A stretch of 64,000 nucleotides of DNA, taken from Paraphysomonas bandaiensis. Its lineage: Eukaryota > Protista > Chrysophyceae. The notes beneath the pieces are model-generated. The model made no database searches, was not told the origin of the DNA, and saw only the letters and a program-made list of their open reading frames with translations. Of the stretch, positions 1 to 48,217 are shown one piece after another (the first letter of the stretch is position 1; every line of letters begins with the position of its first letter). The translations under genes were made by a program, and so were the position numbers. The stretch is from contig CBFFRP010000138.1 in assembly GCA_965644295.1 (NCBI GenBank), forward strand, positions 1-64,000. Direction: 5' to 3'.

Positions 1-1094
1 GACATCATCATAATAATATTGATAACTATATTAATGCAATAACGATATGATAACATAATATGTAGGGTATATGTAGCTTGTTTTGTATAAGATTGGTGAC
101 AACAAGAGATACAGATTATTATTACGAGGGCAAGACGACAGACAACTAGGATTTACCCTCGAACACACGTTTTCTTTGATCTACGCGATTGCTACCCGTT
201 GGTTTACGCCTATATCCATACGGTAGTCGGTGTCATAGCGTTTTGAGTTAGGAAGCATTGATTGGTACCGCATGTGCGATATTCGTAGTCCATTCGTCAT
301 TGTGAGAAGCTTTCTGATGGTTTTGAACAGCTCTATGTGCTTGCTCATCGTTCCGGACTATGATATACGATTATTTTCCCATTATCACACACCGTCGATT
401 TTCTGTGGAATGGGGAGGAATTCGTAGGGTGCCATTGGGCACAGATGCATAGGTGTTCTAGGCATGCTGATGGTAAAATTTCCCTATGTATAGATGGCTA
501 GGTCTGTTGTACACTGGTTCGCAGGAATGGCGATGTTTAACGGGTTGAAATGTGATTGCAGTTGTCATGAAATGTGCTTGCAATTTTTGTGGATTCGAAT
601 ATTGTCATTTTGGGGTGTTTGTGGCTCGAAAATCGGCGATTTTCTACAATTCTCAAAAATTGGGGATTTTTGGGTTTTTGGGACTCAAAAATCGGAGGTT
701 TTTGGAAAAGACCTATTTAGGCGTATTTCAGGGGGTTTTTGACTATAAACGATGTAGGATATGAATCGTATGTAGTGTAGTACATGTTTGAGCATATTGT
801 ACGGTTGTGGTTGCATTCAATGTCCTGTGTATGAGGAGGAGTCTTTAGACTAGGGGTCTGTCTTTGGTTTTGCTTGTAACTTAGTTTTTAATAATAATTC
901 TCTATGAAATTAACATAGTTGGTTGACTGATCTGTCTATTGGGAGCTTTAGATTGCAGGATACAGGGGAGCTTGTGTTTCTGGCTGTTGGTTTCTTAAAG
1001 AGTTATTATTATAGTTTTCTGTTTTGTTGTTTCGACAAACAACCATTTCACATATCTTTTCAGTGATCTTAGGTTGCAAGACCTGAGTTGTTCA
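1..1094 (+). repeat. 5' LTR (truncated by window start)
   Basis: Matches 6650-7743 with no difference seen by eye; ends ...GTTGTTCA. Confidence 0.95.
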
Positions 1095-1164: not shown

Positions 1165-2634
1165 ATGTCTGATTCGGAGGGTCCTGTTGGTTCATCTGAG
1201 TTAGATGAAGTTAAGGAAATGTTACGGGGAATTGCTCTCAATTTGGAGAACGTCACTAAGTTGTGTGTAGCAACTGCCAGTAGGGTAGATAATCTGGAGT
1301 CCAGAATGTCTATTAATGAAGAAGTTTTAGTTAATGAGCTGGAGGAAGCTCAGAAGGAAGTAGATGAGGCCATCCGTGACCAGCGTGAAGAGCAGCAGGG
1401 ACATACCAGAGAGAGTGGCAGGGCTGCCGACGACAAAGGCAAGAAGAAAGAGCGAAGGACATCTGTATTCATGAGGGAGGCTGAGTCTTCAGAGGAAATG
1501 GAGGTTCCAAAGCATGTCATCATCAATGTTGAAAAGCCATCCCATAAGCATATTTTTCTGGATTCGATGGAGCTTAGTGATTTTACAAAGTTTATCATCC
1601 AATGGTTTGAATATGAACAGATCAATGGGATTAAGCTTGAGCCAGCCCAGATAGTTAGCAGGCGTGTTCGGAACCTGCTTATGTTCAACAATAGCTTGAC
1701 GGATAAAATGTTTGTTAAGTTGAGTGCTCAGAAATTCTGTGAGCTGATGGCTAAGGAGACCAAGGTGTTGTCTAAAGTGGAGTTCATTGAGACTTTGCGA
1801 TACGCGCTGAGATATTTTAAGCCACTGGATTGGAAATCAGTGCGGCCGAATACACATGAGCTGTTTTTTCAAGAGATTTTGAAGCGAAAGAGTATTTTTA
1901 TGCGTACGTTTACTATCATGATGGAGGCCAATAGTACTAAGTGTCCGCCGGTTGGAGGAAAAGAGTTTGGATCGGCTCAAGTATTTTTGGAGTTGATCGA
2001 CGAGTCTTACAACAAACGAGTTCTGGCTGAGATTCCAAGGGTGACGGATACTAATTATGGTAATGTTGAAGAGTTTCTGGATACATACGTTTCCAAGGCG
2101 AGTGAGCATTATGAGGCGTCCAAGAACATCAGATTGGTGCCTTATGAAGGGTCCGATTTCAGTAGGAAGCAAATTCAAAGGAGTTCGAGGAATCGGGACA
2201 ATGGATACGTTGCAAAGGAGAAACCGAAATCTTTAAACAACGTGCAGTTTGCGGACCGAGTTGAGGATGATTTCTACAGCGATTTAGATGACAAGGAGGT
2301 TGACCCGATAGTTGTGGTCAAGGATGACGGGATGTCAGATGATGATTTCGAGAATGAGGTTGAGGAGATGTTGCTCGGCGAACCAGAGTCTGATAAGGAA
2401 GCTATAGAACAGGTGATGAACCTGGAGAAGACTGTTAATCCAACCCGTGGTTGCGTTGCGTATGCGTTGTATGGGAACTGCTACAAAGGGAAGGAATGTA
2501 AGCATGTCCAGGGTCATAATGGAGCAGTTGCAACGGAAACCCGGAAATGGATGATGAAGAAGCTGTCTCAGATGATGGCAGATGATTCCAAAGGGCCGCG
2601 AAAGATTTTGCCGAGGCCTGGTGGAGTGACTTGA
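1165..2634 (+). CDS. gag: Gag-like protein (489 aa), N-terminal coiled coil, C-terminal Cys/His finger
   Basis: First ORF after the 5' LTR, in frame with pol; C-x8-C-x5-C-x-H-x3-H cluster near the C-terminus. Confidence 0.85.
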   Translation: MSDSEGPVGSSELDEVKEMLRGIALNLENVTKLCVATASRVDNLESRMSINEEVLVNELEEAQKEVDEAIRDQREEQQGHTRESGRAADDKGKKKERRTSVFMREAESSEEMEVPKHVIINVEKPSHKHIFLDSMELSDFTKFIIQWFEYEQINGIKLEPAQIVSRRVRNLLMFNNSLTDKMFVKLSAQKFCELMAKETKVLSKVEFIETLRYALRYFKPLDWKSVRPNTHELFFQEILKRKSIFMRTFTIMMEANSTKCPPVGGKEFGSAQVFLELIDESYNKRVLAEIPRVTDTNYGNVEEFLDTYVSKASEHYEASKNIRLVPYEGSDFSRKQIQRSSRNRDNGYVAKEKPKSLNNVQFADRVEDDFYSDLDDKEVDPIVVVKDDGMSDDDFENEVEEMLLGEPESDKEAIEQVMNLEKTVNPTRGCVAYALYGNCYKGKECKHVQGHNGAVATETRKWMMKKLSQMMADDSKGPRKILPRPGGVT

Positions 2635-2637
2635 CAA

Positions 2638-5600
2638 ATGTGCGAGGCTAATGGTTCGCAGGATCACGAAGAAATATTGTACGGTTTGAATGATCCTGAG
2701 ACTGTTAGTCGAGTTTTCCTCAGAAATTTGATGAATGTCTGTAATACGCGAGAACGAAAAGACTTGACATTGGCTCATTCTGGGGGAAGTATTGTATGTG
2801 ATGATAACTATATAATATCTGTGCGTGGAATATTGTTCGACACTGGAGCCCTAACATCTAACTTCATTTCCAAGGATTTGTTTGAGACGTTTAGAAATCA
2901 TGTGTGTGAAAACAAAGTCATAAAAAAAGAAACAGTTATAGGATTTGCCGATAAAACGTCGAGAATGAAGTGTAGTTTTGTAGTGAAATTAAAATTGAGG
3001 TTTGAGAGAGAAGACTCCAAGGGAGAGTTCGTGTTATATGACGGGGATTTTATTGTTGCTGATATGGGTAGCAACGATATTATCATTGGACTTCCGGCTA
3101 TCGTTAAGGATCTATGGGATTATTTTCTATTTATGCTTAAAGGAAGGACTATTGAACGAATCGAATCAGAAGTAAGTTTTATTAAAAGGCGTGAGGACGA
3201 TGTTACCGAGGATGATTTGTTGTTGAATGCGGTTGAAGAATTATTGCAGCCGTGGTGTGACAGTAGTAGGGAGGTAGCACCTGAAGAATTGGATGTTCCG
3301 GACCCTTCGCAGTTCGGATTTGCCTCAAGTTTTCTTGGAAAAACTAGAGAGGAAGCTTTGAGCGAGTTCGAGGATATGTTTGGTGAGCACGTGTCTCCAG
3401 AGTTCTCAGCAGCGCGACCGGTGCTGGAGTTATTGAGGACTAAGGGAGTAGAGGTATTTGTTCCAGAGCGGTGGGAAGGTATAAAAGGAGTGGATCCGTT
3501 GAACATCAAGTTCGCTGAGAATTTGCCTCCTAGGATCAAGCCGAAGGCAAGACCCGTAAATCCTAGATTATATGAGGATGCGGAGAAGGAGTTTAGGAGA
3601 CTGTGTGGTTACATCTATGTTCCTAGTAGGTCGCCATGGGCTTCTTGTTTGGTGATCGCGCCAAAAGCCACGAAACCTTTTATTAGGATTTGTGGGGATT
3701 ACGTGCAAATCAACAAGTACATTCCAAGTCCACACTATACAGTTCCTAATGTAAGACATGAGTTGGATCGTATTATTGGCTATAAGATATTTATGGACAT
3801 TGACCTCACGAATGCGTTCCATCAGATCAGGTTGCATGAGAACACATCTGAAAAATTGTCAGTTCAAACACCGTGGGGCCAATTTCAGCCTTTATTCCTT
3901 CCGGAGGGAGTGTCTCCAGGGATTAGTGTGTTGCAAGAAGCGGTAGTCAAATTGTTTGGAGATCTGGAATGGGCGCTGTGTATATTTGATAATGTTCTGT
4001 TATTGGCACATGATTTTGATGATGCGTATAAGAAGCTGGAGATTTTCCTGGATAGATGCATTGAACATGGAGTTGTGTTGAAATTTGCAAAGACCTGGTT
4101 AGGATTTAGGGAGATCAAGTTTTTTGGCTATTTGGTAAGGCACAATAGTTTCGAGCTCACGGACGATAGGAAAGAGGCTTTATTGAAGATTCCTTTTCCA
4201 GAGAATGGAAATAGATGTAAGAAGATTAGATCTTTGTTGGGTCTGGGAGTATTCTTTGCTCCATTTGTTCAGAATTACTCAGATTTGGTCAAACATCTTA
4301 CGGATATGACTAAGAGTAGTTTTAATTGGGAAGAAACGACATGGCAGCACGATTATAGGCAGGAGTTTGAAAACTATAAGAGTGGTTTGCAACAGTCTTG
4401 TGCTTTGTTTTATCCGAATTATGATCTTGAGTGGACACTTAGGACAGATGCCAGTGACTATGGAGTGGCAGGCATTCTTTTCCAGACTGTTGAGGGAACT
4501 GGGTCTAGTCCGATTCAACAGCAAACTATTGCTATCTGTTCCAAGAAATTGTCAGAGCAAGCCTTGAAGTGGTGTACTATTGAGAAGGAGGGTTTTGGTA
4601 TATTCTATTCAGTCAAGAAATTTTCGTTTTATCTGAGAGGAAAGAAATTTACAATCGAGACGGACCACAACAACCTTGTGTGGATGGAGGCATCAGAAGT
4701 TGCGAAGATAATTCGATGGAGAATTTATTTGCAGGATTTTGATTTTTTGATTCGTCATATCCCAGGGAAGAACAATGTGGTTGCGGATTGCTTGTCAAGA
4801 TTGCTGTATTTGTCCGGATTTGTGGACGAAAGTGACGATTTCGACTCAGATGAAGTGAACTTCGTGACACTGCATAACATCTTTGAAAAAGACGATTTTG
4901 AGGACGAAGTGCAGGAGATCGCGCCACCTACGGAGGAGCAGAGGATAGATTATCATCAGGCTATCAAGGAGGTTCACAACGCGCAAGTTGGACACTGGGG
5001 TGCGAAAGAGACGTGGAAGCGTCTGTGTAAGCAATTTCCGGGACACGGTGTACCATTCAAGGTGGTTGCAGATTTCGTGGACGAATGCATCAACTGTCAG
5101 AAGAACCGGAGGGAGCTGAAGCAGCGATTGATTCCTATTACTAGACATTTAAAACCGCCTCATTCCAGGAGTGCTTTGGGAATTGACGCGGTTGCTATTA
5201 CACCTGTTTCTAAATCTGGTTACACGCATATTGTGGTCATGGTTAATTTGTTTACGAAATTGGTGTACCTATATGCGGTGAAAGGAATGACGGCTATCAA
5301 TTTGGCTACAGCAGTATGGAAGTGCTGGTGTACATACGGGCTCACGGATATGATTATATCAGATATGGGTCCGGATCTCAAATCCGAGCTTTTCGCAGAA
5401 CTGGTTAAGTTGTCAGGACTTCGTCATGTATTTAGTATTGCCAACAGGCACGTCAACGGATGTGAGCGTATTATTAAGGAAGTGGTTCGTCACATCCGTG
5501 CTATTTGTTTTGACAAGCGAATCGAGGCTGATGCTGTTTTGGAGGACGAACTGTTACTTGCCACTATCATGTTCATTCTGAATACCCACGAGAGTAGTGA

Positions 5601-6576
5601 GACGGGGTATTCTGCGTTCGAACTGACGTTTGGGTCCCAGGATTCTATCTATAAGAACCTTTTGGCCGCCCAGGGGAGAGACAATGATCCGTCTCATCAG
5701 CTGTTGAAAAGGCTGAACGATTACTTAGCTCTAGTCCGCCAGATATCAGCAGATTACCAGAAGTCTCTAGTTGAGAAACGAGCGGAAGCGGGTTTGGATC
5801 CTGCCAAACAAAACCAGTATTGTCCAGGCGATTTTGTTATGTTCGACGCTGGTGCTAAACCACATCCGAAATTATCCTCGAGGATGAAGGGTCCTTTCGA
5901 AGTGGTACGGCAATATAAGAATGATGTTCAAATTCGAAATCTTCTTACCGGGGGGATTCGGGAATACTCTGTCTCTGATCTTGAGCCATTTTTCGGAGAT
6001 AAGGAATCGGCTATTGAAGCGGCGATGCGAGATCATGAGCAATTTAAGGTGGAGGAGATTCTTTCATATACGGGAGATTCACGAACAAAATCTACGATGG
6101 TCTTCAAGGTGAAGTATGCGGACGGCGATATCTTGGACATTCCATGGACACCGGATATTCAGTGTGAGGCATATTATGATTTCTGTGAGTCTAGGCCTTA
6201 CCTGCGGCATCTTGCGTATGACTCGTTTACTGCGAAGCGTTTTGTCTCTTCAATGAGGAAAGAGAATATCACAACAGTGTCGGTTGGAGATACTGTTTAT
6301 GTTGACCTCAGGTTCTATGGTGACCTGTGGTACGAGAGTCTTGGTTTACCGGATTATGCCACGGCCGCGTATGTCATGGAATTCACGTACACCCATTGGT
6401 ATCATAAGAATTCCAAACGCAAGATTAGCGCCCGTTTTAATCTCAACGGTTCCAACTATGCCTTCGACAACTATTTGGTCTATTGTTGGGGATCCCAGAA
6501 GGATTTTGACCCTGCTCGCATGATTTTGGTTGATGCGTCGCTCGCTGCGGCTTATCCCAAAATTATTCAGGAGTAG
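2638..6576 (+). CDS. pol: Pol polyprotein: aspartic protease, RT, RNase H, integrase, chromodomain, extra C-terminal domain
   Basis: LFDTGA (protease); DIDLTNAFHQI and CIFDN (RT); TDASDYG, TDHNNL, NVVADCLSR (RNase H); H-x5-H...CINC, D-D-E and GPF (integrase); FKVEEIL...FKVKYADG (chromodomain-like). Confidence 0.96.
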   Translation: MCEANGSQDHEEILYGLNDPETVSRVFLRNLMNVCNTRERKDLTLAHSGGSIVCDDNYIISVRGILFDTGALTSNFISKDLFETFRNHVCENKVIKKETVIGFADKTSRMKCSFVVKLKLRFEREDSKGEFVLYDGDFIVADMGSNDIIIGLPAIVKDLWDYFLFMLKGRTIERIESEVSFIKRREDDVTEDDLLLNAVEELLQPWCDSSREVAPEELDVPDPSQFGFASSFLGKTREEALSEFEDMFGEHVSPEFSAARPVLELLRTKGVEVFVPERWEGIKGVDPLNIKFAENLPPRIKPKARPVNPRLYEDAEKEFRRLCGYIYVPSRSPWASCLVIAPKATKPFIRICGDYVQINKYIPSPHYTVPNVRHELDRIIGYKIFMDIDLTNAFHQIRLHENTSEKLSVQTPWGQFQPLFLPEGVSPGISVLQEAVVKLFGDLEWALCIFDNVLLLAHDFDDAYKKLEIFLDRCIEHGVVLKFAKTWLGFREIKFFGYLVRHNSFELTDDRKEALLKIPFPENGNRCKKIRSLLGLGVFFAPFVQNYSDLVKHLTDMTKSSFNWEETTWQHDYRQEFENYKSGLQQSCALFYPNYDLEWTLRTDASDYGVAGILFQTVEGTGSSPIQQQTIAICSKKLSEQALKWCTIEKEGFGIFYSVKKFSFYLRGKKFTIETDHNNLVWMEASEVAKIIRWRIYLQDFDFLIRHIPGKNNVVADCLSRLLYLSGFVDESDDFDSDEVNFVTLHNIFEKDDFEDEVQEIAPPTEEQRIDYHQAIKEVHNAQVGHWGAKETWKRLCKQFPGHGVPFKVVADFVDECINCQKNRRELKQRLIPITRHLKPPHSRSALGIDAVAITPVSKSGYTHIVVMVNLFTKLVYLYAVKGMTAINLATAVWKCWCTYGLTDMIISDMGPDLKSELFAELVKLSGLRHVFSIANRHVNGCERIIKEVVRHIRAICFDKRIEADAVLEDELLLATIMFILNTHESSETGYSAFELTFGSQDSIYKNLLAAQGRDNDPSHQLLKRLNDYLALVRQISADYQKSLVEKRAEAGLDPAKQNQYCPGDFVMFDAGAKPHPKLSSRMKGPFEVVRQYKNDVQIRNLLTGGIREYSVSDLEPFFGDKESAIEAAMRDHEQFKVEEILSYTGDSRTKSTMVFKVKYADGDILDIPWTPDIQCEAYYDFCESRPYLRHLAYDSFTAKRFVSSMRKENITTVSVGDTVYVDLRFYGDLWYESLGLPDYATAAYVMEFTYTHWYHKNSKRKISARFNLNGSNYAFDNYLVYCWGSQKDFDPARMILVDASLAAAYPKIIQE

Positions 6577-6587
6577 CTACGGCATCC

Positions 6588-6603
6588 GGGGGGGGAGAAA
6601 GGG
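6588..6603 (+). other. Polypurine tract
   Basis: GGGGGGGGAGAAAGGG, 3 nt upstream of the TG that starts the 3' LTR. Confidence 0.9.
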
Positions 6604-6606
6604 TAA

Positions 6607-7743
6607 TGTAAAGCCGTGGGCTTTTATAACACCCTTTTACACGTTTTATGACATCATCATAATAATATTGATAACTATATTAATGCAATAACGATATGAT
6701 AACATAATATGTAGGGTATATGTAGCTTGTTTTGTATAAGATTGGTGACAACAAGAGATACAGATTATTATTACGAGGGCAAGACGACAGACAACTAGGA
6801 TTTACCCTCGAACACACGTTTTCTTTGATCTACGCGATTGCTACCCGTTGGTTTACGCCTATATCCATACGGTAGTCGGTGTCATAGCGTTTTGAGTTAG
6901 GAAGCATTGATTGGTACCGCATGTGCGATATTCGTAGTCCATTCGTCATTGTGAGAAGCTTTCTGATGGTTTTGAACAGCTCTATGTGCTTGCTCATCGT
7001 TCCGGACTATGATATACGATTATTTTCCCATTATCACACACCGTCGATTTTCTGTGGAATGGGGAGGAATTCGTAGGGTGCCATTGGGCACAGATGCATA
7101 GGTGTTCTAGGCATGCTGATGGTAAAATTTCCCTATGTATAGATGGCTAGGTCTGTTGTACACTGGTTCGCAGGAATGGCGATGTTTAACGGGTTGAAAT
7201 GTGATTGCAGTTGTCATGAAATGTGCTTGCAATTTTTGTGGATTCGAATATTGTCATTTTGGGGTGTTTGTGGCTCGAAAATCGGCGATTTTCTACAATT
7301 CTCAAAAATTGGGGATTTTTGGGTTTTTGGGACTCAAAAATCGGAGGTTTTTGGAAAAGACCTATTTAGGCGTATTTCAGGGGGTTTTTGACTATAAACG
7401 ATGTAGGATATGAATCGTATGTAGTGTAGTACATGTTTGAGCATATTGTACGGTTGTGGTTGCATTCAATGTCCTGTGTATGAGGAGGAGTCTTTAGACT
7501 AGGGGTCTGTCTTTGGTTTTGCTTGTAACTTAGTTTTTAATAATAATTCTCTATGAAATTAACATAGTTGGTTGACTGATCTGTCTATTGGGAGCTTTAG
7601 ATTGCAGGATACAGGGGAGCTTGTGTTTCTGGCTGTTGGTTTCTTAAAGAGTTATTATTATAGTTTTCTGTTTTGTTGTTTCGACAAACAACCATTTCAC
7701 ATATCTTTTCAGTGATCTTAGGTTGCAAGACCTGAGTTGTTCA
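6607..7743 (+). repeat. 3' LTR (1137 bp)
   Basis: TG...CA termini; direct repeat of the window start. Confidence 0.95.
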
Positions 7744-8075
7744 TAACTCAGGACCCTAATTCAGAATGCTGAGCCCCCTCCAAAACCAATGGAGACCCAT
7801 CCCAAAGGGAGACCCCCAGATCAAAAGCGCCGGTGAGTCCACGGACACACGATAAAGGCGAATTTCATATCACACAAAAAGAACGGAAGTGGTTGCACCT
7901 TGGTGCTTGCGGCGACGCACAAGCAGCTTTCGTAGCGTTAAATAGTAGGATAAAAGAGTTTGTATTGATTAGTTACGGGTAGTGGTCTAACTAGTATGAC
8001 TAGCATTCTTCTAGCCACTAATTGATGCAAGGTCTCAACGCCTATTGCTAAATAATCAGACATTCACTATATATA
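7744..8075 (+). mobile_element. 3' end of a non-LTR retrotransposon (ORF C-terminus, structured 3' UTR, TA tail), interrupted by the Gypsy element
   Basis: Short frame ...PPPKPMETHPKGRPPDQKRR* (TGA 7834-7836), then the tail 7884-8069 found in many dispersed copies, then TATATA. Confidence 0.6.
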
Positions 8076-9848: not shown

Positions 9849-10142
9849 CTTAAGGCGAACTCATTCCGGATGCTTGACTTCCCTGTTCCCTGGATACTAC
9901 CCTTACAGTGGGTCCATTCCCGGATAACCTTCAGGTGGGCCCAGTGCTAGATGCCAGCTTGCTCTTCAGGGCTCAAAGACGTCTACACCAAGTGACTCTT
10001 ATTGCTCTCCCTTGCACCACTCAAGCATTTGGCTATTATTGGACAGAACAATATCTGCGACTATATATATTTTGCGGCTCTCGTTAGTTTCCCGCATTCC
10101 CCAGAACACCACCAAAAAGTGTAAGTCCGACTTTGTTGAGGG
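9849..10142 (-). mobile_element. SINE-like retroposon, 5' half
   Basis: Similar to 45140-45451 and 28105-28232; ends at the shared terminus CTTTGTTGAGGG. Confidence 0.7.
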
Positions 10143-10152
10143 TTTAAAATGA

Positions 10153-10221
10153 GCATTCTTCTAGCCACTAATTGATGCAAGGTCTCAACGCCTATTGCTA
10201 AATAATCAGACATTCACTACT
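10153..10221 (+). mobile_element. 5'-truncated 69-bp retroposon tail insertion with 13-bp TSD
   Basis: Matches 8003-8069; flanked by perfect GGGTTTAAAATGA at 10140-10152 and 10222-10234. Confidence 0.85.
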
Positions 10222-10979
10222 GGGTTTAAAATGATGTTGATGTTTCGTGTGCAAGTCGGCATCTTTGGGATGAGGTTGGAATTGTTCTAAAAGCCAGAAA
10301 TAGAATTGAAAGTACTTAGTTGGAAATAATAGCAAATTAAATGTAATGACCGTAATGGTTAATAATTATTGCAAATATTTTTATTGGATACTTCTAACCA
10401 ATTTATCGCTAATGGATTGTTACGCAAGCCTGAGTGATACCAGTAACCGCCAGCCAGTCATAGCGTTTAGAGAATGAAGGACCTGTATACTGCACACCTA
10501 CTTTAGAGGTGGAGTCTTTCCCATGTCGCTACATCTCTTTAGTTTTCTGCTCTCTAAATTCTTTTTGAGCTGATCTCTGTTGCATTGGTTTTACTTTACC
10601 TGCTGCGACCTGTGCTGTAGGGAGTATCTGCTTGCGATTATAATTCTAGGTAATCAGCCAATAACCAATAATATTTCATGGGAATGACGCACTTCAACTA
10701 GTACATTAATATTTTGTAGACATTTTCAGGTCTCTATAACATTCACTACAACAGAAACATATACACTTGCCTGGGTATAAAATGCAGCGCAATTCTAATC
10801 ACAGCCAGCTTTAAAGACAGAAGAATTTCACACAACAAATTATCATTTATTCATATATTATTATCAGTAACTCAGCAGAGACCGTATTAACGACACAGTT
10901 CATCAGCATCTCAACTCATAGCATAACCACATGCAGTCTAAACAGTATATATCCTGCACAGGTTGGAGTGCGATGGTTT

Positions 10980-11443
10980 CTACACTTGAGAAGACTGAGA
11001 AGCAGGGGGAGCGGATGCCTTACTACCACCTTCAGAATATGCGGAGTATGTGGAGTCCAACTCTTGGGGATTGTTAACAATTTTCTTTTCGTTATTTGAT
11101 CTGTTAAACAGATTTCACAGAACATATATAAACGATGTATTGAATTATACCCGCAAATTAAAGGAGATACAAAAATAGCAGCAGCCAAGAGGAGAACAAA
11201 TCCCAGAATATGACAGAAGGAAGCAAAGCCATATCCACCGGCAAGAGCTCCGTATGCCTCCTCCAACTCATCATCGTTCTGCTGATCTTTAATGGTATCG
11301 TTGAAGCTAGAGAGGCCCGAGTTGGAAGAGCAAAACCCGAGCAGCATGAGTGCACCTGCACCTAGCACAATTGAGGTTGCAAGCTTGGCCTTGGCACGTT
11401 CATAGAAAGCTCTTGAGGTGAGGGTAAGTGTATCTGCACTCAT
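10980..11443 (-). CDS. Small two-TM membrane protein, 2 exons (intron 11101-11150); paralog of 47364-47720
   Basis: Two hydrophobic segments; removing the GT-AG intron restores CGSNNEK, matching the paralog's CGSANEK; stop TAG at 10980-10982. Confidence 0.7.
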
Positions 11444-36427: not shown

Positions 36428-38088
36428 ATGTCGGTGGGTGAGAAATCTACCAGTGAGGTGTTGGAACAACTCCAAGATAAAGGTGACTACTTCACACGGC
36501 TCATTATCATCGAGCGGAAGCGTTTGGCAGATCTAGAGGAAGCATACATCCATATCATGGGTGAAATTGAAAATTATCGTATGAGGGCTAAGAAAACAGC
36601 CATCGATATTATGAATTTAAATATATTGACCCCTAATCCCGCCTACCAGAAAGCTGATGGGTGTGAGATTCAGAAACAAGCTAATCTCGTAACTAACAAG
36701 ATGATGCACATATTAGAGGCTAAGTTGAATAAGCTTTTGCAGCGTAGGAGTAATGAGCAAAATAGAAATCGTCAAAAGAAAAAAGACATCGATCACATGA
36801 GACGATTGAGAATCCAAACTGACTCTGCACACAAGAACTATGATACAGAATTATCTACATTGAAAGAAAAAACGCAAAAGCTTATGTCAGAATGCACTGG
36901 TGTCATGGAAGCTCGTGAGCGAGTAATTGAAATGAAAGAAGCTCTCGAAAAAGCTAATGCAGAAGAGCAGGAGAAATTTGAGGAAGAATTTGAAGAAATG
37001 GGCCACTACATCAAAGATCAAAACGTCAGTCTGGAAGAAACGCTGTTAAAAGAGCGAAATACCGATATTATTGACGACTTTGAGTTCCAAAATGGAGACT
37101 TGTCTGTGGAAGAGGAAGATGAGATGGCGGGTAGGGTCGGTCAATTAACTAGTTTTGTAGCTAGTGAGCAAAACTCCTTGGCCAGCATTCAGCGCACTAT
37201 TTACAATTACGAGAAGATGTTTACCGAGCTTAAGCGTATCACTCAGACAGAAAGCTTGGATGAAATAATTTCTACTTATGCAGCACAAGAAGAAGAAATG
37301 TTTTCTTTGTACAACTATATTCAGAGTCAAAATACAGAGATTGAGCTTGCTCTCGAGCACAAGAATAGATTAGAAGAGGAGGTCAAAAAGTAAGTTGTGA
37401 AGTCATAGTGTAATGTTCGTAGTGCATGAGTATATGTTGTATCGTGGCTGTACACTACGATGCTGCACCACACGATGTACATTGTGGTAACTGTTTGATA
37501 CACAGATACGAGGAGCACCAATTAGATCAAGAATATCAGCGGAAGAGTATACTGGACTCCCTTCAAGCCCGTTTACAGAGTACTTTAGATGCCACCAAAT
37601 CATGTGAAGAAGAGAACCGTAAAAATCACGATAGTGTCCAGCAAATAGCCAAAAAAGTTCAGAGCTTGTTCTTCAAGCTACAGTGTGATCAGATGGATAC
37701 AGCAAAGGGATCAGCTGCGATTGTCAAGGGCTCTAAAAGTGGATCGTCAATGTCCCGTAATGAGTCAAAAATAGCAATTTTAACTGGTCAAGGGGTAGCT
37801 GAGAGTAATGTTCTGGACTACATGGGGGCCGTTGAGCAGAGAGCGGTGGATATTATAGGCGATTATATTCGCTTCCATGGCGGACATACTGAAGGACCTA
37901 GATCGCCCACTCCTGGTCCATCTTCCCCAATGCAGTGGCCCGCGACGACAAATGTGGAATTGCCTGAGTTTGACGAGGATGAACTATTTGTTGATAGGGA
38001 CGACTTGGACAGCAAACCGATTGATTTGGGTACGTTCAAAGAGAAACTCAATAAGAAAATGAACTTCAACGGGGCGAAGACAATGTAG
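36428..38088 (+). CDS. Outer dynein arm docking complex subunit (ODA-DC2/ODAD1/CCDC114-like), 2 exons
   Basis: Long coiled coil with EEEMFSLYNYI and NVLDYMGAVEQR; intron about 37391-37505. Confidence 0.75.
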
Positions 38089-47363: not shown

Positions 47364-47720
47364 CTACACTGCACTGGTTGCCTCTGGCTCTTTTGGCGTC
47401 TTCAACATCATCTTCTCATTCGCAGATCCACAGAGTAAAGGGGAAATATAGATAGCAGCTGTCCAGAAGAAAACCATAGCGAGAATGTAGAAAAATGAAG
47501 CGAATCCAAATCCCGCACTGAACGCCTCGTATACATCTTCCGACTCACTTGAGTTACTCTTATCTGCCATAGTATCGTTAAACGATGATTGTCCTCCAGC
47601 TGTAGTGCAGAATCCAAGAGACATGAGCCCTAATGCACCGCATACAATAGAGAGAACGAGTTTAACTTTGGATCGTTCATAGAAATCACGTGACTTAATA
47701 GTGAGACTGTCCGCACTCAT
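47364..47720 (-). CDS. Small two-TM membrane protein, intronless; paralog of 10980-11443
   Basis: MSADSLTIKSRDFYERSKVKL...GFGFASF...ISPLLCGSANEK aligns along its length with the paralog. Confidence 0.7.
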   Translation of the reverse strand: MSADSLTIKSRDFYERSKVKLVLSIVCGALGLMSLGFCTTAGGQSSFNDTMADKSNSSESEDVYEAFSAGFGFASFFYILAMVFFWTAAIYISPLLCGSANEKMMLKTPKEPEATSAV

Positions 47721-48217
47721 GTTTACTCCGAATAATTGCAATTTACGTAAAAATATATCTGTTAAATGCAATGGGAGTTATACTATTAGTCAGACAAGTG
47801 CCTAGTATTCACTGTCTGCTGTGGTGATATATATGTATATGTATGTATATACGCATAGTGTATGTATGCATGATCCCTATGGAGTAATACGTAGATTGCT
47901 GTACGACTATTTTCATACTTTCATATATATGATGATATGCTGCTGTATGCAAGTGAATCATTCTATATCTTACAGAGAATATCTTCTACAGACAGACGCT
48001 GAAAAAAATCAAGCTCTAAACCATGTTTCAGAAGCAATTAAAGAACCCATAAAATCCTTGATATTCTCAAAATAGACTATAATTGTGCGAAAACTATGGG
48101 TTTTTCTCATCCAGGTTTTGTATAGCCGCAGAAAATACTTCCTTCGTGCTTTACAAGCCGCAGTTCTGATAGGCATACCACAACAAGAATTGCTTCCATC
48201 TAGTTACTTATCCAGAA

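What the first reader, a model, noticed from the sequence alone, without database searches (positions are those of the whole stretch)
3982..3993. Reverse transcriptase active-site motif is IFDN, not YxDD, in a freshly transposed element
Seen: ATA TTT GAT AAT in WALC-IFDN-VLL; the upstream MPFGL-type motif reads LPEGV; the first catalytic Asp (DIDL) is intact; ORFs are uninterrupted and the LTRs look identical. Known: YxDD supplies two of three catalytic aspartates; the second-Asp to Asn change cripples HIV RT but leaves some polymerase activity in Ty1 RT. Inference: with several codon-level changes, this looks like a lineage with a naturally remodelled two-carboxylate RT site rather than one lesion.
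Basis: partly seen in the sequence, partly recalled or inferred. Interest (0 to 1): 0.8.

Follow-up and report, generated by a model that had tools for sequence, protein, structure and literature searches.

The report
Retrotransposon clade with altered polymerase site
A young, intact LTR retrotransposon in a chrysophyte (Paraphysomonas) genome belongs to a large, old clade whose reverse transcriptases all carry asparagine where nearly every other reverse transcriptase has its second motif-C aspartate (hFDN instead of YxDD). The change is therefore a selected lineage trait and not damage.

Summary
ATA TTT GAT AAT at 3982-3993 encodes IFDN in an uninterrupted 1312-aa pol, and it aligns residue for residue with YLDD of Ty3 RT. 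The LTRs are identical over all 1096 comparable bases.

The motif is not a lesion. Of 399 relatives that cover the site (down to 40% RT identity; 209 are at least 1200 aa), 397 have Asn there. 399 of 402 have Glu in place of the Phe of 'PFG', and 396 of 397 have Asp/Glu/Asn two residues before the motif-A Asp. The two YxDD proteins recovered (24-25% identity) lack all three traits and fall outside the clade.

Other polymerase residues stay fixed: fingers Lys/Arg, motif-A Asp, Phe/Tyr steric gate, first motif-C Asp, motif-D Lys. Copies of this family differ by 58 synonymous and 6 non-synonymous changes in pol (dN/dS about 0.03). An AlphaFold model (pLDDT 96) superposes on MMLV, CaMV and Ty3 RT.

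The host is Paraphysomonas; a relative is filed under Ochromonas danica.

There is a precedent: nematode BEL/Pao elements carry YVDN. This is therefore an independent, more extensively remodelled variant in a Ty3/gypsy-type clade. How it catalyses without the third Asp is inferred, not shown.

The parts
1..1094 (+). 5' LTR, cut by the window start (about 43 nt missing); ends ...GTTGTTCA
   Evidence: Identical to 6650-7743 at every position; the identity runs on to 1096/7745. The end was read from the sequence.
1165..2634 (+). gag-like ORF, 489 aa, ends in UGA. No Pfam family. C-terminal Cys/His knuckle (CVAYALYGNCYKGKECKH).
2632..2640 (+). gag-pol junction TGA CAA ATG: one in-frame UGA followed by C, with pol in the same frame as gag (probable stop-codon readthrough)
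   Evidence: The same design (TGA C..) is found in two other families (L003, L005/L007); L004 has gag and pol fused.
2638..6576 (+). pol ORF, 1312 aa: protease (DTG, pol 68-70 = 2839-2847), RT, RNase H, integrase, and a C-terminal extension of about 300 aa with no family match
3535..4437 (+). RT domain (pol 300-600) used for searches, tree and model
   Evidence: Pfam RVT_1 at pol 370-498; Ty3 RT E 1.7e-22; AF2 pLDDT 95.9; Foldseek TM 0.86 MMLV RT, 0.83 CaMV RT, 0.78 Ty3 RT
3796..3807 (+). Motif A, D387-I-D389-L. D389 is the invariant catalytic Asp. D387 is a clade-specific acidic/amide residue (D 377, E 11, N 8 of 397).
   Evidence: Ty3 has T, CaMV S, and the outgroups A and V at the -2 position
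3901..3909 (+). Motif B 'PEG' (P422-E423-G424). Glu replaces the Phe of PFG (position of Gln151 in HIV-1 RT, from own knowledge).
   Evidence: E in 399 of 402 clade proteins; Ty3 and CaMV have F; outgroups have F and Y
3982..3993 (+). Motif C, I449-F450-D451-N452, in place of YxDD
4342..4740 (+). RNase H domain (pol 569-701); expected acidic residues present (TDAS, EKEG, TDHN, ADCLSR)
   Evidence: Pfam RT_RNaseH E 3.6e-23; motif positions
4954..5445 (+). Integrase: H2C2 zinc domain (pol 773-824) and catalytic core (pol 849-936)
   Evidence: Pfam Integrase_H2C2 E 8e-6; rve E 8e-6, 26.4 bits, below Pfam's own cut-off of 32.6; candidate D850, D909, E943
6588..6603 (+). Polypurine tract GGGGGGGGAGAAAGGG, just upstream of the 3' LTR
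6607..7743 (+). 3' LTR (about 1137 nt), TG...CA. Its start is inferred from the TG after the PPT.

Best explanation
The element is a recently inserted, autonomous Ty3/gypsy-type LTR retrotransposon of a chrysophyte (Paraphysomonas). Its RT belongs to a deep, species-rich clade in which motif C is h-[F/Y/H/W]-D-N instead of [Y/F]-x-D-D. Two further active-site changes travel with it: Glu in 'PEG' where others have PFG or PQG, and Asp/Glu/Asn two residues before the motif-A Asp.

Shown: the Asn is fixed and maintained by selection across the clade, the rest of the polymerase machinery is conserved, and this family is young and under strong purifying selection. These RTs must therefore be the working replicases of their elements.

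Inferred: catalysis runs on the two universally conserved carboxylates, the motif-A Asp (D389) and the first motif-C Asp (D451), which bridge the two metal ions in all right-hand polymerases. The motif-D Lys would act as general acid. The Asn carboxamide would hold the hairpin, the primer 3' end or a metal-bound water, as in the natural GDN motif of mononegavirus polymerases. The new Glu and the extra motif-A acid may offset the rate loss that a bare D-to-N change causes in Ty1 RT.
For: The motif position was fixed by phmmer alignment to Ty3 RT and by the hairpin turn in the AF2 model.

Conservation:
- 120/120 nearest relatives carry the motif.
- 147/150 cluster representatives down to 40% identity carry it; 416 representatives score E<=1e-30.
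- 397/399 clade proteins have Asn, 399/402 have Glu, and 396/397 have D/E/N at motif A -2. K44, R51, D90, F/Y95, G125, D152 and K186 are fixed at 98% or more.
- 209 D-N proteins are at least 1200 aa.

Phylogeny: the tree puts all D-N sequences on one side of a branch of 1.34 changes per site from the two YxDD outgroups, with a median terminal branch of 0.9.

Selection:
- pol of the window copy against L001 and L002 shows 58 or 50 synonymous and 6 non-synonymous differences, dN/dS 0.026-0.031, P about 1e-32. L001 against L002 shows 27 synonymous and 0 non-synonymous.
- The Asn codon is AAT in some families and AAC in others.

Youth: the LTRs are identical over 1096 nt.

Fold: pLDDT 95.9; TM 0.86, 0.83 and 0.78 to MMLV, CaMV and Ty3 RT.

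Host: the window cyclin ORF is 100% identical to a Paraphysomonas MMETSP1103 transcript. A relative is labelled Ochromonas danica.

Feasibility: Ty1 RT D211N keeps polymerase activity in vitro (abstract of PMC2148107), and nematode BEL/Pao elements naturally carry YVDN (PMC554778, PMC9094657).
Against: - No enzyme was assayed, so activity is inferred from conservation.
- In Ty1 the same substitution lowers kpol 223-fold, shifts preference to Mn2+ and abolishes transposition (PMC2148107). The paper cited in PMC554778 states that mutating either YXDD Asp inactivates retroviral RTs. A bare D-to-N is therefore costly, and the compensation proposed here is untested.
- Identical LTRs could in principle come from assembly collapse.
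- The target-site duplication could not be checked, because the 5' end lies outside the window.
- No primer-binding site was recognised.
- Only two YxDD outgroups were available, so the point where D-N arose is not bracketed closely.
Confidence: 0.85

Rival explanations
1. Relocated third carboxylate. The site is not reduced to two carboxylates. The clade-specific Glu of PEG (E423, in the dNTP pocket) and/or the acidic residue at motif A -2 (D387) takes over the role of the lost Asp, giving a differently wired three-carboxylate site. Metal preference or nucleotide selectivity might change as a result.
For: E is present in 399/402 clade proteins and D/E/N at motif A -2 in 396/397. Both are absent from Ty3, CaMV and the two YxDD outgroups, so the three changes sit on the same stem branch. 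In Ty1 a bare D-to-N costs about 200-fold in rate (PMC2148107), which makes compensation plausible.
Against: Co-occurrence on a single branch is one evolutionary event, not replicated covariation. Position -2 tolerates Asn in 8 proteins, which argues against an obligatory carboxylate there. No coordinates, metal-bound model or assay was available.
Confidence: 0.3
2. This copy is a dead RT mutant mobilised in trans by a YxDD helper.
For: In retroviral RTs, mutation of either YXDD Asp is reported to inactivate the enzyme (as cited in PMC554778).
Against: Every close and distant relative has D-N. dN/dS in pol is about 0.03. Both Asn codons occur. No YxDD relative closer than 25% identity was found among the best 150 representatives.
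Confidence: 0.02
3. Mis-assigned motif. The real catalytic pair is the 'DFDD' seven residues downstream (pol 459-462, window 4012-4023), so the RT would be canonical after all.
For: The window copy does read AHDFDDAY just after the hairpin.
Against: The clade consensus there is DYxDAY and not xxDD. The AF2 model places it at the N-terminus of helix 161-178, not at the hairpin turn. Ty3 has SESPEEH at the aligned positions. D152 of FDN is invariant even in the outgroups.
Confidence: 0.02
4. Sequencing or assembly artefact at one codon.
For: None specific.
Against: The same 12 nucleotides occur in two independent metagenome assemblies (L001, L002), and the motif occurs in hundreds of other proteins.
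Confidence: 0.01

Closest known systems
Ty3/gypsy (Metaviridae) LTR retrotransposons, e.g. yeast Ty3
   Same: LTRs, a polypurine tract, gag then pol, and the order protease-RT-RNase H-integrase. Pfam finds RVT_1, RT_RNaseH, RT_RNaseH_2, Integrase_H2C2 and rve (the last below its curated cut-off). Ty3 RT is the best solved-structure sequence match (E 1.7e-22), and the fold superposes (TM 0.78).
   Different: Motif C is IFDN, not YLDD. Motif B is PEG, not PFG. Motif A is D-x-D, not T-x-D, and is followed by NA(F) instead of SG(Y). gag has no Pfam match and no CCHC knuckle. pol carries a C-terminal extension of about 300 aa with no family match.
Nematode BEL/Pao elements (Belpaoviridae): Cer7-Cer12 of C. 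elegans, Atlas virus of Ancylostoma ceylanicum
   Same: A natural, lineage-wide Asp-to-Asn change at the last position of YxDD (YVDN), in elements with identical LTRs and intact ORFs (PMC554778; PMC9094657).
   Different: They belong to a different LTR superfamily and to animal hosts, and the Tyr of the motif is retained. Whether they share the PEG or D-x-D changes could not be checked, because no sequences were obtainable. The window pol has Ty3/gypsy-type domains and no BEL/Pao-type Pfam domain, so the change arose independently.
Ty1 RT D211N (engineered mutant)
   Same: The same residue change at the same motif position, with polymerase activity retained in vitro (PMC2148107).
   Different: It is a laboratory mutant of a Ty1/copia RT: kpol falls 223-fold, it prefers Mn2+, and transposition is lost unless suppressors arise in RNase H. 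Here the Asn is the selected wild-type state of a thriving clade.
GDN(Q) motif C of mononegavirus L polymerases (own knowledge, not tested here)
   Same: A right-hand polymerase family whose natural motif C is x-D-N, which shows that the second Asp is dispensable in some palm domains.
   Different: These are RNA-dependent RNA polymerases of RNA viruses, with no sequence relationship beyond the palm fold.
GyDi, the diatom-specific Ty3/gypsy cluster (Maumus et al. 2009, PMC2806351)
   Same: Ty3/gypsy-type elements of ochrophyte stramenopiles that form their own cluster in RT trees.
   Different: The only hosts named here are chrysophytes.

Membership tests
Ty3/gypsy (Metaviridae) LTR retrotransposon | Direct long terminal repeats flanking the coding region, TG...CA ends | tested here: met
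   1096/1096 identical positions. The 3' LTR begins TG after the PPT, and both LTRs end CA. The 5' LTR start lies outside the window.
Ty3/gypsy (Metaviridae) LTR retrotransposon | pol domain order protease-RT-RNase H-integrase | tested here: met
   DTG at pol 68; RVT_1 370-498; RT_RNaseH 597-701; Integrase_H2C2 773-824; rve 849-936 (26.4 bits, below Pfam's curated cut-off of 32.6)
Ty3/gypsy (Metaviridae) LTR retrotransposon | RT most similar to Ty3/gypsy-type RTs | tested here: met
   The best PDB sequence hits are Ty3 RT 4ol8 (E 1.7e-22) and Ty3 Gag-Pol 7q5b. Foldseek matches MMLV, CaMV and Ty3 RT at TM 0.78-0.86.
Ty3/gypsy (Metaviridae) LTR retrotransposon | RT motif C [Y/F]xDD | tested here: not met
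   IFDN; D-N in 397/399 clade proteins
Ty3/gypsy (Metaviridae) LTR retrotransposon | Polypurine tract before the 3' LTR and a tRNA primer-binding site after the 5' LTR | tested here: inconclusive
   A 16-nt PPT is present at 6588-6603. No TGG-type PBS is evident after 1094, and the window holds no tRNA gene to compare with.
Ty3/gypsy (Metaviridae) LTR retrotransposon | Target-site duplication | not testable with these tools
   The 5' end of the element lies upstream of window position 1.
Nematode BEL/Pao YVDN group (Belpaoviridae) | BEL/Pao-type pol (Pao peptidase and BEL/Pao RT) with YVDN | tested here: not met
   Pfam finds only Ty3/gypsy-type domains and no Pao-type peptidase. The motif is IFDN with no Tyr. 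The host is a chrysophyte. A direct tree with BEL/Pao RTs was not built.
Functional reverse transcriptase (right-hand polymerase) | Conserved fingers Lys/Arg, motif-A Asp, steric-gate aromatic, first motif-C Asp, motif-D Lys | tested here: met
   K44 384/388, R51 388/389, D90 395/397, F/Y95 399/401, D152 397/399, K186 381/384. R51, D90, G125, D152 and K186 are invariant, outgroups included. Equivalence to HIV-1 K65, R72, D110, Y115, D185 and K220 comes from own knowledge.
Functional reverse transcriptase (right-hand polymerase) | Measured RNA-dependent DNA polymerase activity | not testable with these tools
   Needs an enzyme assay.

The most novel reading that the evidence does not exclude
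This protist clade has rewired the RT active site and not merely lost a ligand. The Glu of PEG and/or the extra acidic residue of motif A would form, with the two remaining Asp residues and the Asn, a new metal- and substrate-binding geometry with different metal preference, fidelity or nucleotide selectivity. That would be the first natural RT lineage shown to work with a relocated third carboxylate, and a second, independent natural experiment beside the nematode YVDN elements.
Probability: 0.3. Interest if true: 0.75.

Novelty: new variant of a known kind. Interest (0 to 1): 0.6.

Why it matters
YxDD is treated as the signature of reverse transcriptases, and its second Asp as part of a catalytic triad. 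Mutating it kills retroviral RTs and blocks Ty1 transposition.

This clade holds hundreds of families, many with intact pol ORFs of 1200 aa or more, and at least one family is young and under strong purifying selection. It has kept Asn at that position through more than one substitution per site of divergence. Together with the nematode YVDN elements, this shows that the third carboxylate is dispensable in nature, and it supplies wild-type enzymes with which to ask why.

There are practical consequences as well:
- RT-finding pipelines and 'intact element' filters that require YxDD will misclassify these elements as dead.
- Some copies are already filed under bacterial MAGs.
- The clade appears abundant in aquatic metagenomes and in chrysophyte genomes, whose transposons are little studied.

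Tried and rejected
1. Dead-copy hypothesis: rejected by conservation and dN/dS.
2. The downstream 'DFDD' as the true catalytic motif: rejected.
3. Host identification by exact look-up of two window ORFs: nothing on record. It was solved with the cyclin ORF instead.
4. Organism names for relatives: cluster look-up gave none. NCBI assemblies GCA_009712145.1 and GCA_050043615.1 carry relatives, but no paper in the library cites them. The taxonomic range beyond Paraphysomonas and Ochromonas therefore stays open.
5. Literature search for IFDN/xFDN and similar motifs in RTs: nothing for Ty3/gypsy. The only hits were YVDN in nematode BEL/Pao elements. The diatom GyDi papers and a chrysophyte genomics preprint do not discuss RT motifs.
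6. Chromodomain in the C-terminal extension: no significant Pfam match.
7. P0304 (IMDG with PFG) as a possible intermediate: it sits inside the clade on a long branch, so it is more likely a decayed fragment.
8. Measuring side-chain distances in the AF2 model: not possible, because the tool returns no coordinates.

The window is not human: its cyclin ORF is 100% identical to a Paraphysomonas transcript and its genes are compact and protist-like. The alignment tool printed a majority line for the RT domain, and it was not used further.
Full report
**Observation.** Window 3982-3993 is ATATTTGATAAT. It lies in an uninterrupted ORF, 2638-6576 on the + strand, of 1312 aa, and encodes I449-F450-D451-N452 in the context WALC-IFDN-VLLLA. 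Upstream are DIDL (pol 387-390) and LPEGV (pol 421-425). A 489-aa gag-like ORF (1165-2634) precedes pol. The sequence 1-1096 is identical at every position to 6650-7745. A 16-nt polypurine tract (6588-6603) is followed by TG, and both repeats end in CA. The LTR is therefore about 1137 nt, and the window start cuts off about 43 nt of the 5' copy.

**Is IFDN really at the YxDD position?** phmmer against all PDB chains gives Ty3 RT as the best match (4ol8_A, E 1.7e-22). It aligns ALCIFDNVLLLA with VNVYLDDILIFS, LPEGV with MPFGL, and DIDLTNAFHQI with TLDLHSGYHQI. CaMV RT aligns in the same way. An AlphaFold2 model of pol 300-600, built on an alignment of 131 RT domains, has mean pLDDT 95.9. It places F151-D152 (domain numbering) at the turn between strands 147-150 and 153-158, the classical motif-C hairpin. 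Foldseek against the PDB returns MMLV RT (TM 0.86), CaMV RT (0.83) and Ty3 RT (0.78). A 'DFDD' seven residues further on (pol 459-462) is a decoy. It lies at the start of the following helix, the clade consensus there is DYxDAY, and Ty3 has SESPEEH at those positions.

**Lesion or lineage trait?**
- A word search with the RT region of the full-length pol found 531 relatives. All of the best 120 (53-100% identical in the RT) have [ILMVT]FDN, PEG and D-x-D.
- An exhaustive HMMER search of 1.84 billion cluster representatives with the RT domain alone found 416 representatives at E<=1e-30. Of the best 150 (down to 40% identity), 147 carry h-[F/Y/H/W/M]-D-N.
- The three exceptions are two ordinary YxDD polyproteins at 24-25% identity, which ranked high only because they hold several RT stretches, and one 319-aa fragment with IMDG.
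- A third search restricted to short proteins added 114 fragments. Of the 110 that cover the motif, 108 carry D-N.
- Over everything collected and leaving out the two outgroups, Asn is present in 397 of 399 proteins that cover the site, Glu of PEG in 399 of 402, and Asp/Glu/Asn at motif A -2 in 396 of 397. 209 D-N proteins are 1200 aa or longer.
- In a maximum-likelihood tree built without the trait columns, all D-N sequences lie on one side of a branch of 1.34 changes per site from the two YxDD outgroups. Terminal branches have a median of 0.9 changes per site, so the clade is old. The IMDG fragment sits inside it on a long branch.

**Is the enzyme under selection?**
- The residues a polymerase cannot do without are fixed in the clade: K44 and R51 in the fingers, D90 in motif A, F/Y95 at the steric gate, G125, D152 in motif C and K186 in motif D. 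R51, D90, G125, D152 and K186 are invariant even when the outgroups are included. Assigning these to HIV-1 K65, R72, D110, Y115, G152, D185 and K220 rests on my own knowledge of the motifs.
- Two independent metagenome assemblies carry near-identical copies of this family (L001, L002). Against them the window's pol differs by 58 or 50 synonymous and only 6 non-synonymous changes (dN/dS 0.026-0.031, binomial P about 1e-32). The two metagenome copies differ from each other by 27 synonymous and no non-synonymous changes. Such a pattern among transposon copies means the divergence accumulated in lineages that had to keep a working pol.
- The Asn codon is AAT in this family and in two other families, and AAC in two more, and the Asp codon likewise varies between GAT and GAC.
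- Protease DTG, the RNase H acidic residues, and the integrase zinc finger and acidic residues are all present.
- With identical LTRs, the window copy looks like a recent insertion of an autonomous element.

**Host.** The window carries compact protist-type genes: a cyclin, a DnaJ/TPR protein, an ODAD1-like coiled coil and a DAO-type oxidoreductase. The cyclin ORF is 100% identical to a transcript of MMETSP1103, taxon 36769, Paraphysomonas (Chrysophyceae, Stramenopiles). The window is not human. One relative at 56% RT identity is labelled Ochromonas danica in EukProt. Most others come from unnamed metagenome contigs, and two come from NCBI assemblies that I could not tie to an organism.

**How it most likely works.**
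- *Shown:* the clade keeps the motif-A Asp and the first motif-C Asp invariant, replaces the second motif-C Asp by Asn, moves the aromatic residue from the first to the second motif-C position, and gains Glu in PEG and an acidic or amide residue at motif A -2.
- *Inferred:* phosphoryl transfer runs on the two bridging carboxylates common to all right-hand polymerases, with the motif-D Lys as general acid. The Asn would keep a hydrogen-bonding or weak metal-ligand role. Mononegavirus polymerases, with their natural GDN motif, show that such a palm can work (own knowledge). Ty1 RT D211N shows that an LTR-element RT still polymerises with Asn, although 223-fold more slowly, with a Mn2+ preference and without supporting transposition (abstract of PMC2148107).
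- That cost makes compensation likely. The two clade-specific acidic residues are the obvious candidates, but they arose on the same single branch, and I could not measure distances in the model. I give this rewiring version about 0.3.

**What is known.** Full-text searches for IFDN, xFDN and similar motifs found nothing on Ty3/gypsy RTs. They did find a precedent in another superfamily. Bowen and McDonald reported YVDN in C. elegans Cer7-Cer12, as cited in PMC554778, which notes that its activity 'remains to be determined by biochemical analysis'. The hookworm Atlas virus paper calls Y[X]DD to YVDN a distinguishing feature of nematode belpaoviruses (PMC9094657). The window element has Ty3/gypsy-type domains and no BEL/Pao-type ones, so its D-to-N change is independent. 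It is also more extensive: the Tyr is lost, and Glu and the extra acid are gained. The diatom GyDi cluster (PMC2806351) is the nearest named stramenopile Ty3/gypsy group, but whether it belongs to this clade could not be tested.

**Verdict.** Because natural YVDN elements are already known, I rate it a new variant of a known kind. It is of real interest to RT enzymology and to transposon annotation. The catalytic explanation still has to be tested at the bench.

Noticed in passing
window 2632-2640; L003 about 9908-9913; L005 about 1752-1757; L004 1619-7588: gag and pol are in the same frame, separated by a single UGA followed by C (TGA CAA, TGA CTA, TGA CAG) in three different families. A fourth family has gag and pol fused. 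This points to a conserved UGA-C readthrough design for Gag-Pol.
   Followed up: partly
window 4012-4023 (pol 459-462): 'DFDD' lies seven residues after IFDN and could be mistaken for a displaced YxDD. It sits at the start of the next helix and is not conserved as DD (clade consensus DYxDAY).
   Followed up: yes
window 4908-5736 against L001/L002: About 40 of the 67 nucleotide differences between the window copy and the metagenome copies are bunched in this 0.8-kb stretch (end of RNase H, integrase). Nearly all are synonymous, which suggests recombination between sub-families.
   Followed up: no
window 2338-2631 (gag C-terminus) and 5638-6573 (pol C-terminus): gag has no Pfam match and ends in a Cys/His knuckle (C-x8-C-x5-C-x-H) instead of the retroviral CCHC. 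pol has a post-integrase extension of about 300 aa with a chromodomain-like look but no significant family match.
   Followed up: partly
window 8002-8069 and 10152-10219: A perfect 68-nt direct repeat, 2150 nt apart, just downstream of the element. Its nature is unknown.
   Followed up: no
window 10916-11443 (-) and 47364-47771 (-): Two small ORFs with similar N-terminal halves (MSAD.L....R.FYER.K.KL... with hydrophobic stretches): paralogous small membrane-protein genes 36 kb apart.
   Followed up: no
L005 84-10696 (NCBI GCA_050043615.1): Two gag-pol units of a related family lie head to tail on one contig, 1.7 kb apart, like a tandem array sharing an LTR.
   Followed up: no
P0346: A D-N-clade RT fragment is deposited as a protein of a 'Phenylobacterium zucineum' MAG. 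It is probably a eukaryotic contig binned into a bacterial genome.
   Followed up: no
L003 4918-7773 (-): On a 793-kb metagenome contig a second, 5'-truncated element of the clade (motif SFDN) lies next to the full-length one, so the clade is multi-copy in that genome.
   Followed up: partly
window 36428-38088 (+): An ODAD1-like (outer dynein arm docking) coiled-coil gene is split over two ORFs, which fits a flagellate host.
   Followed up: no
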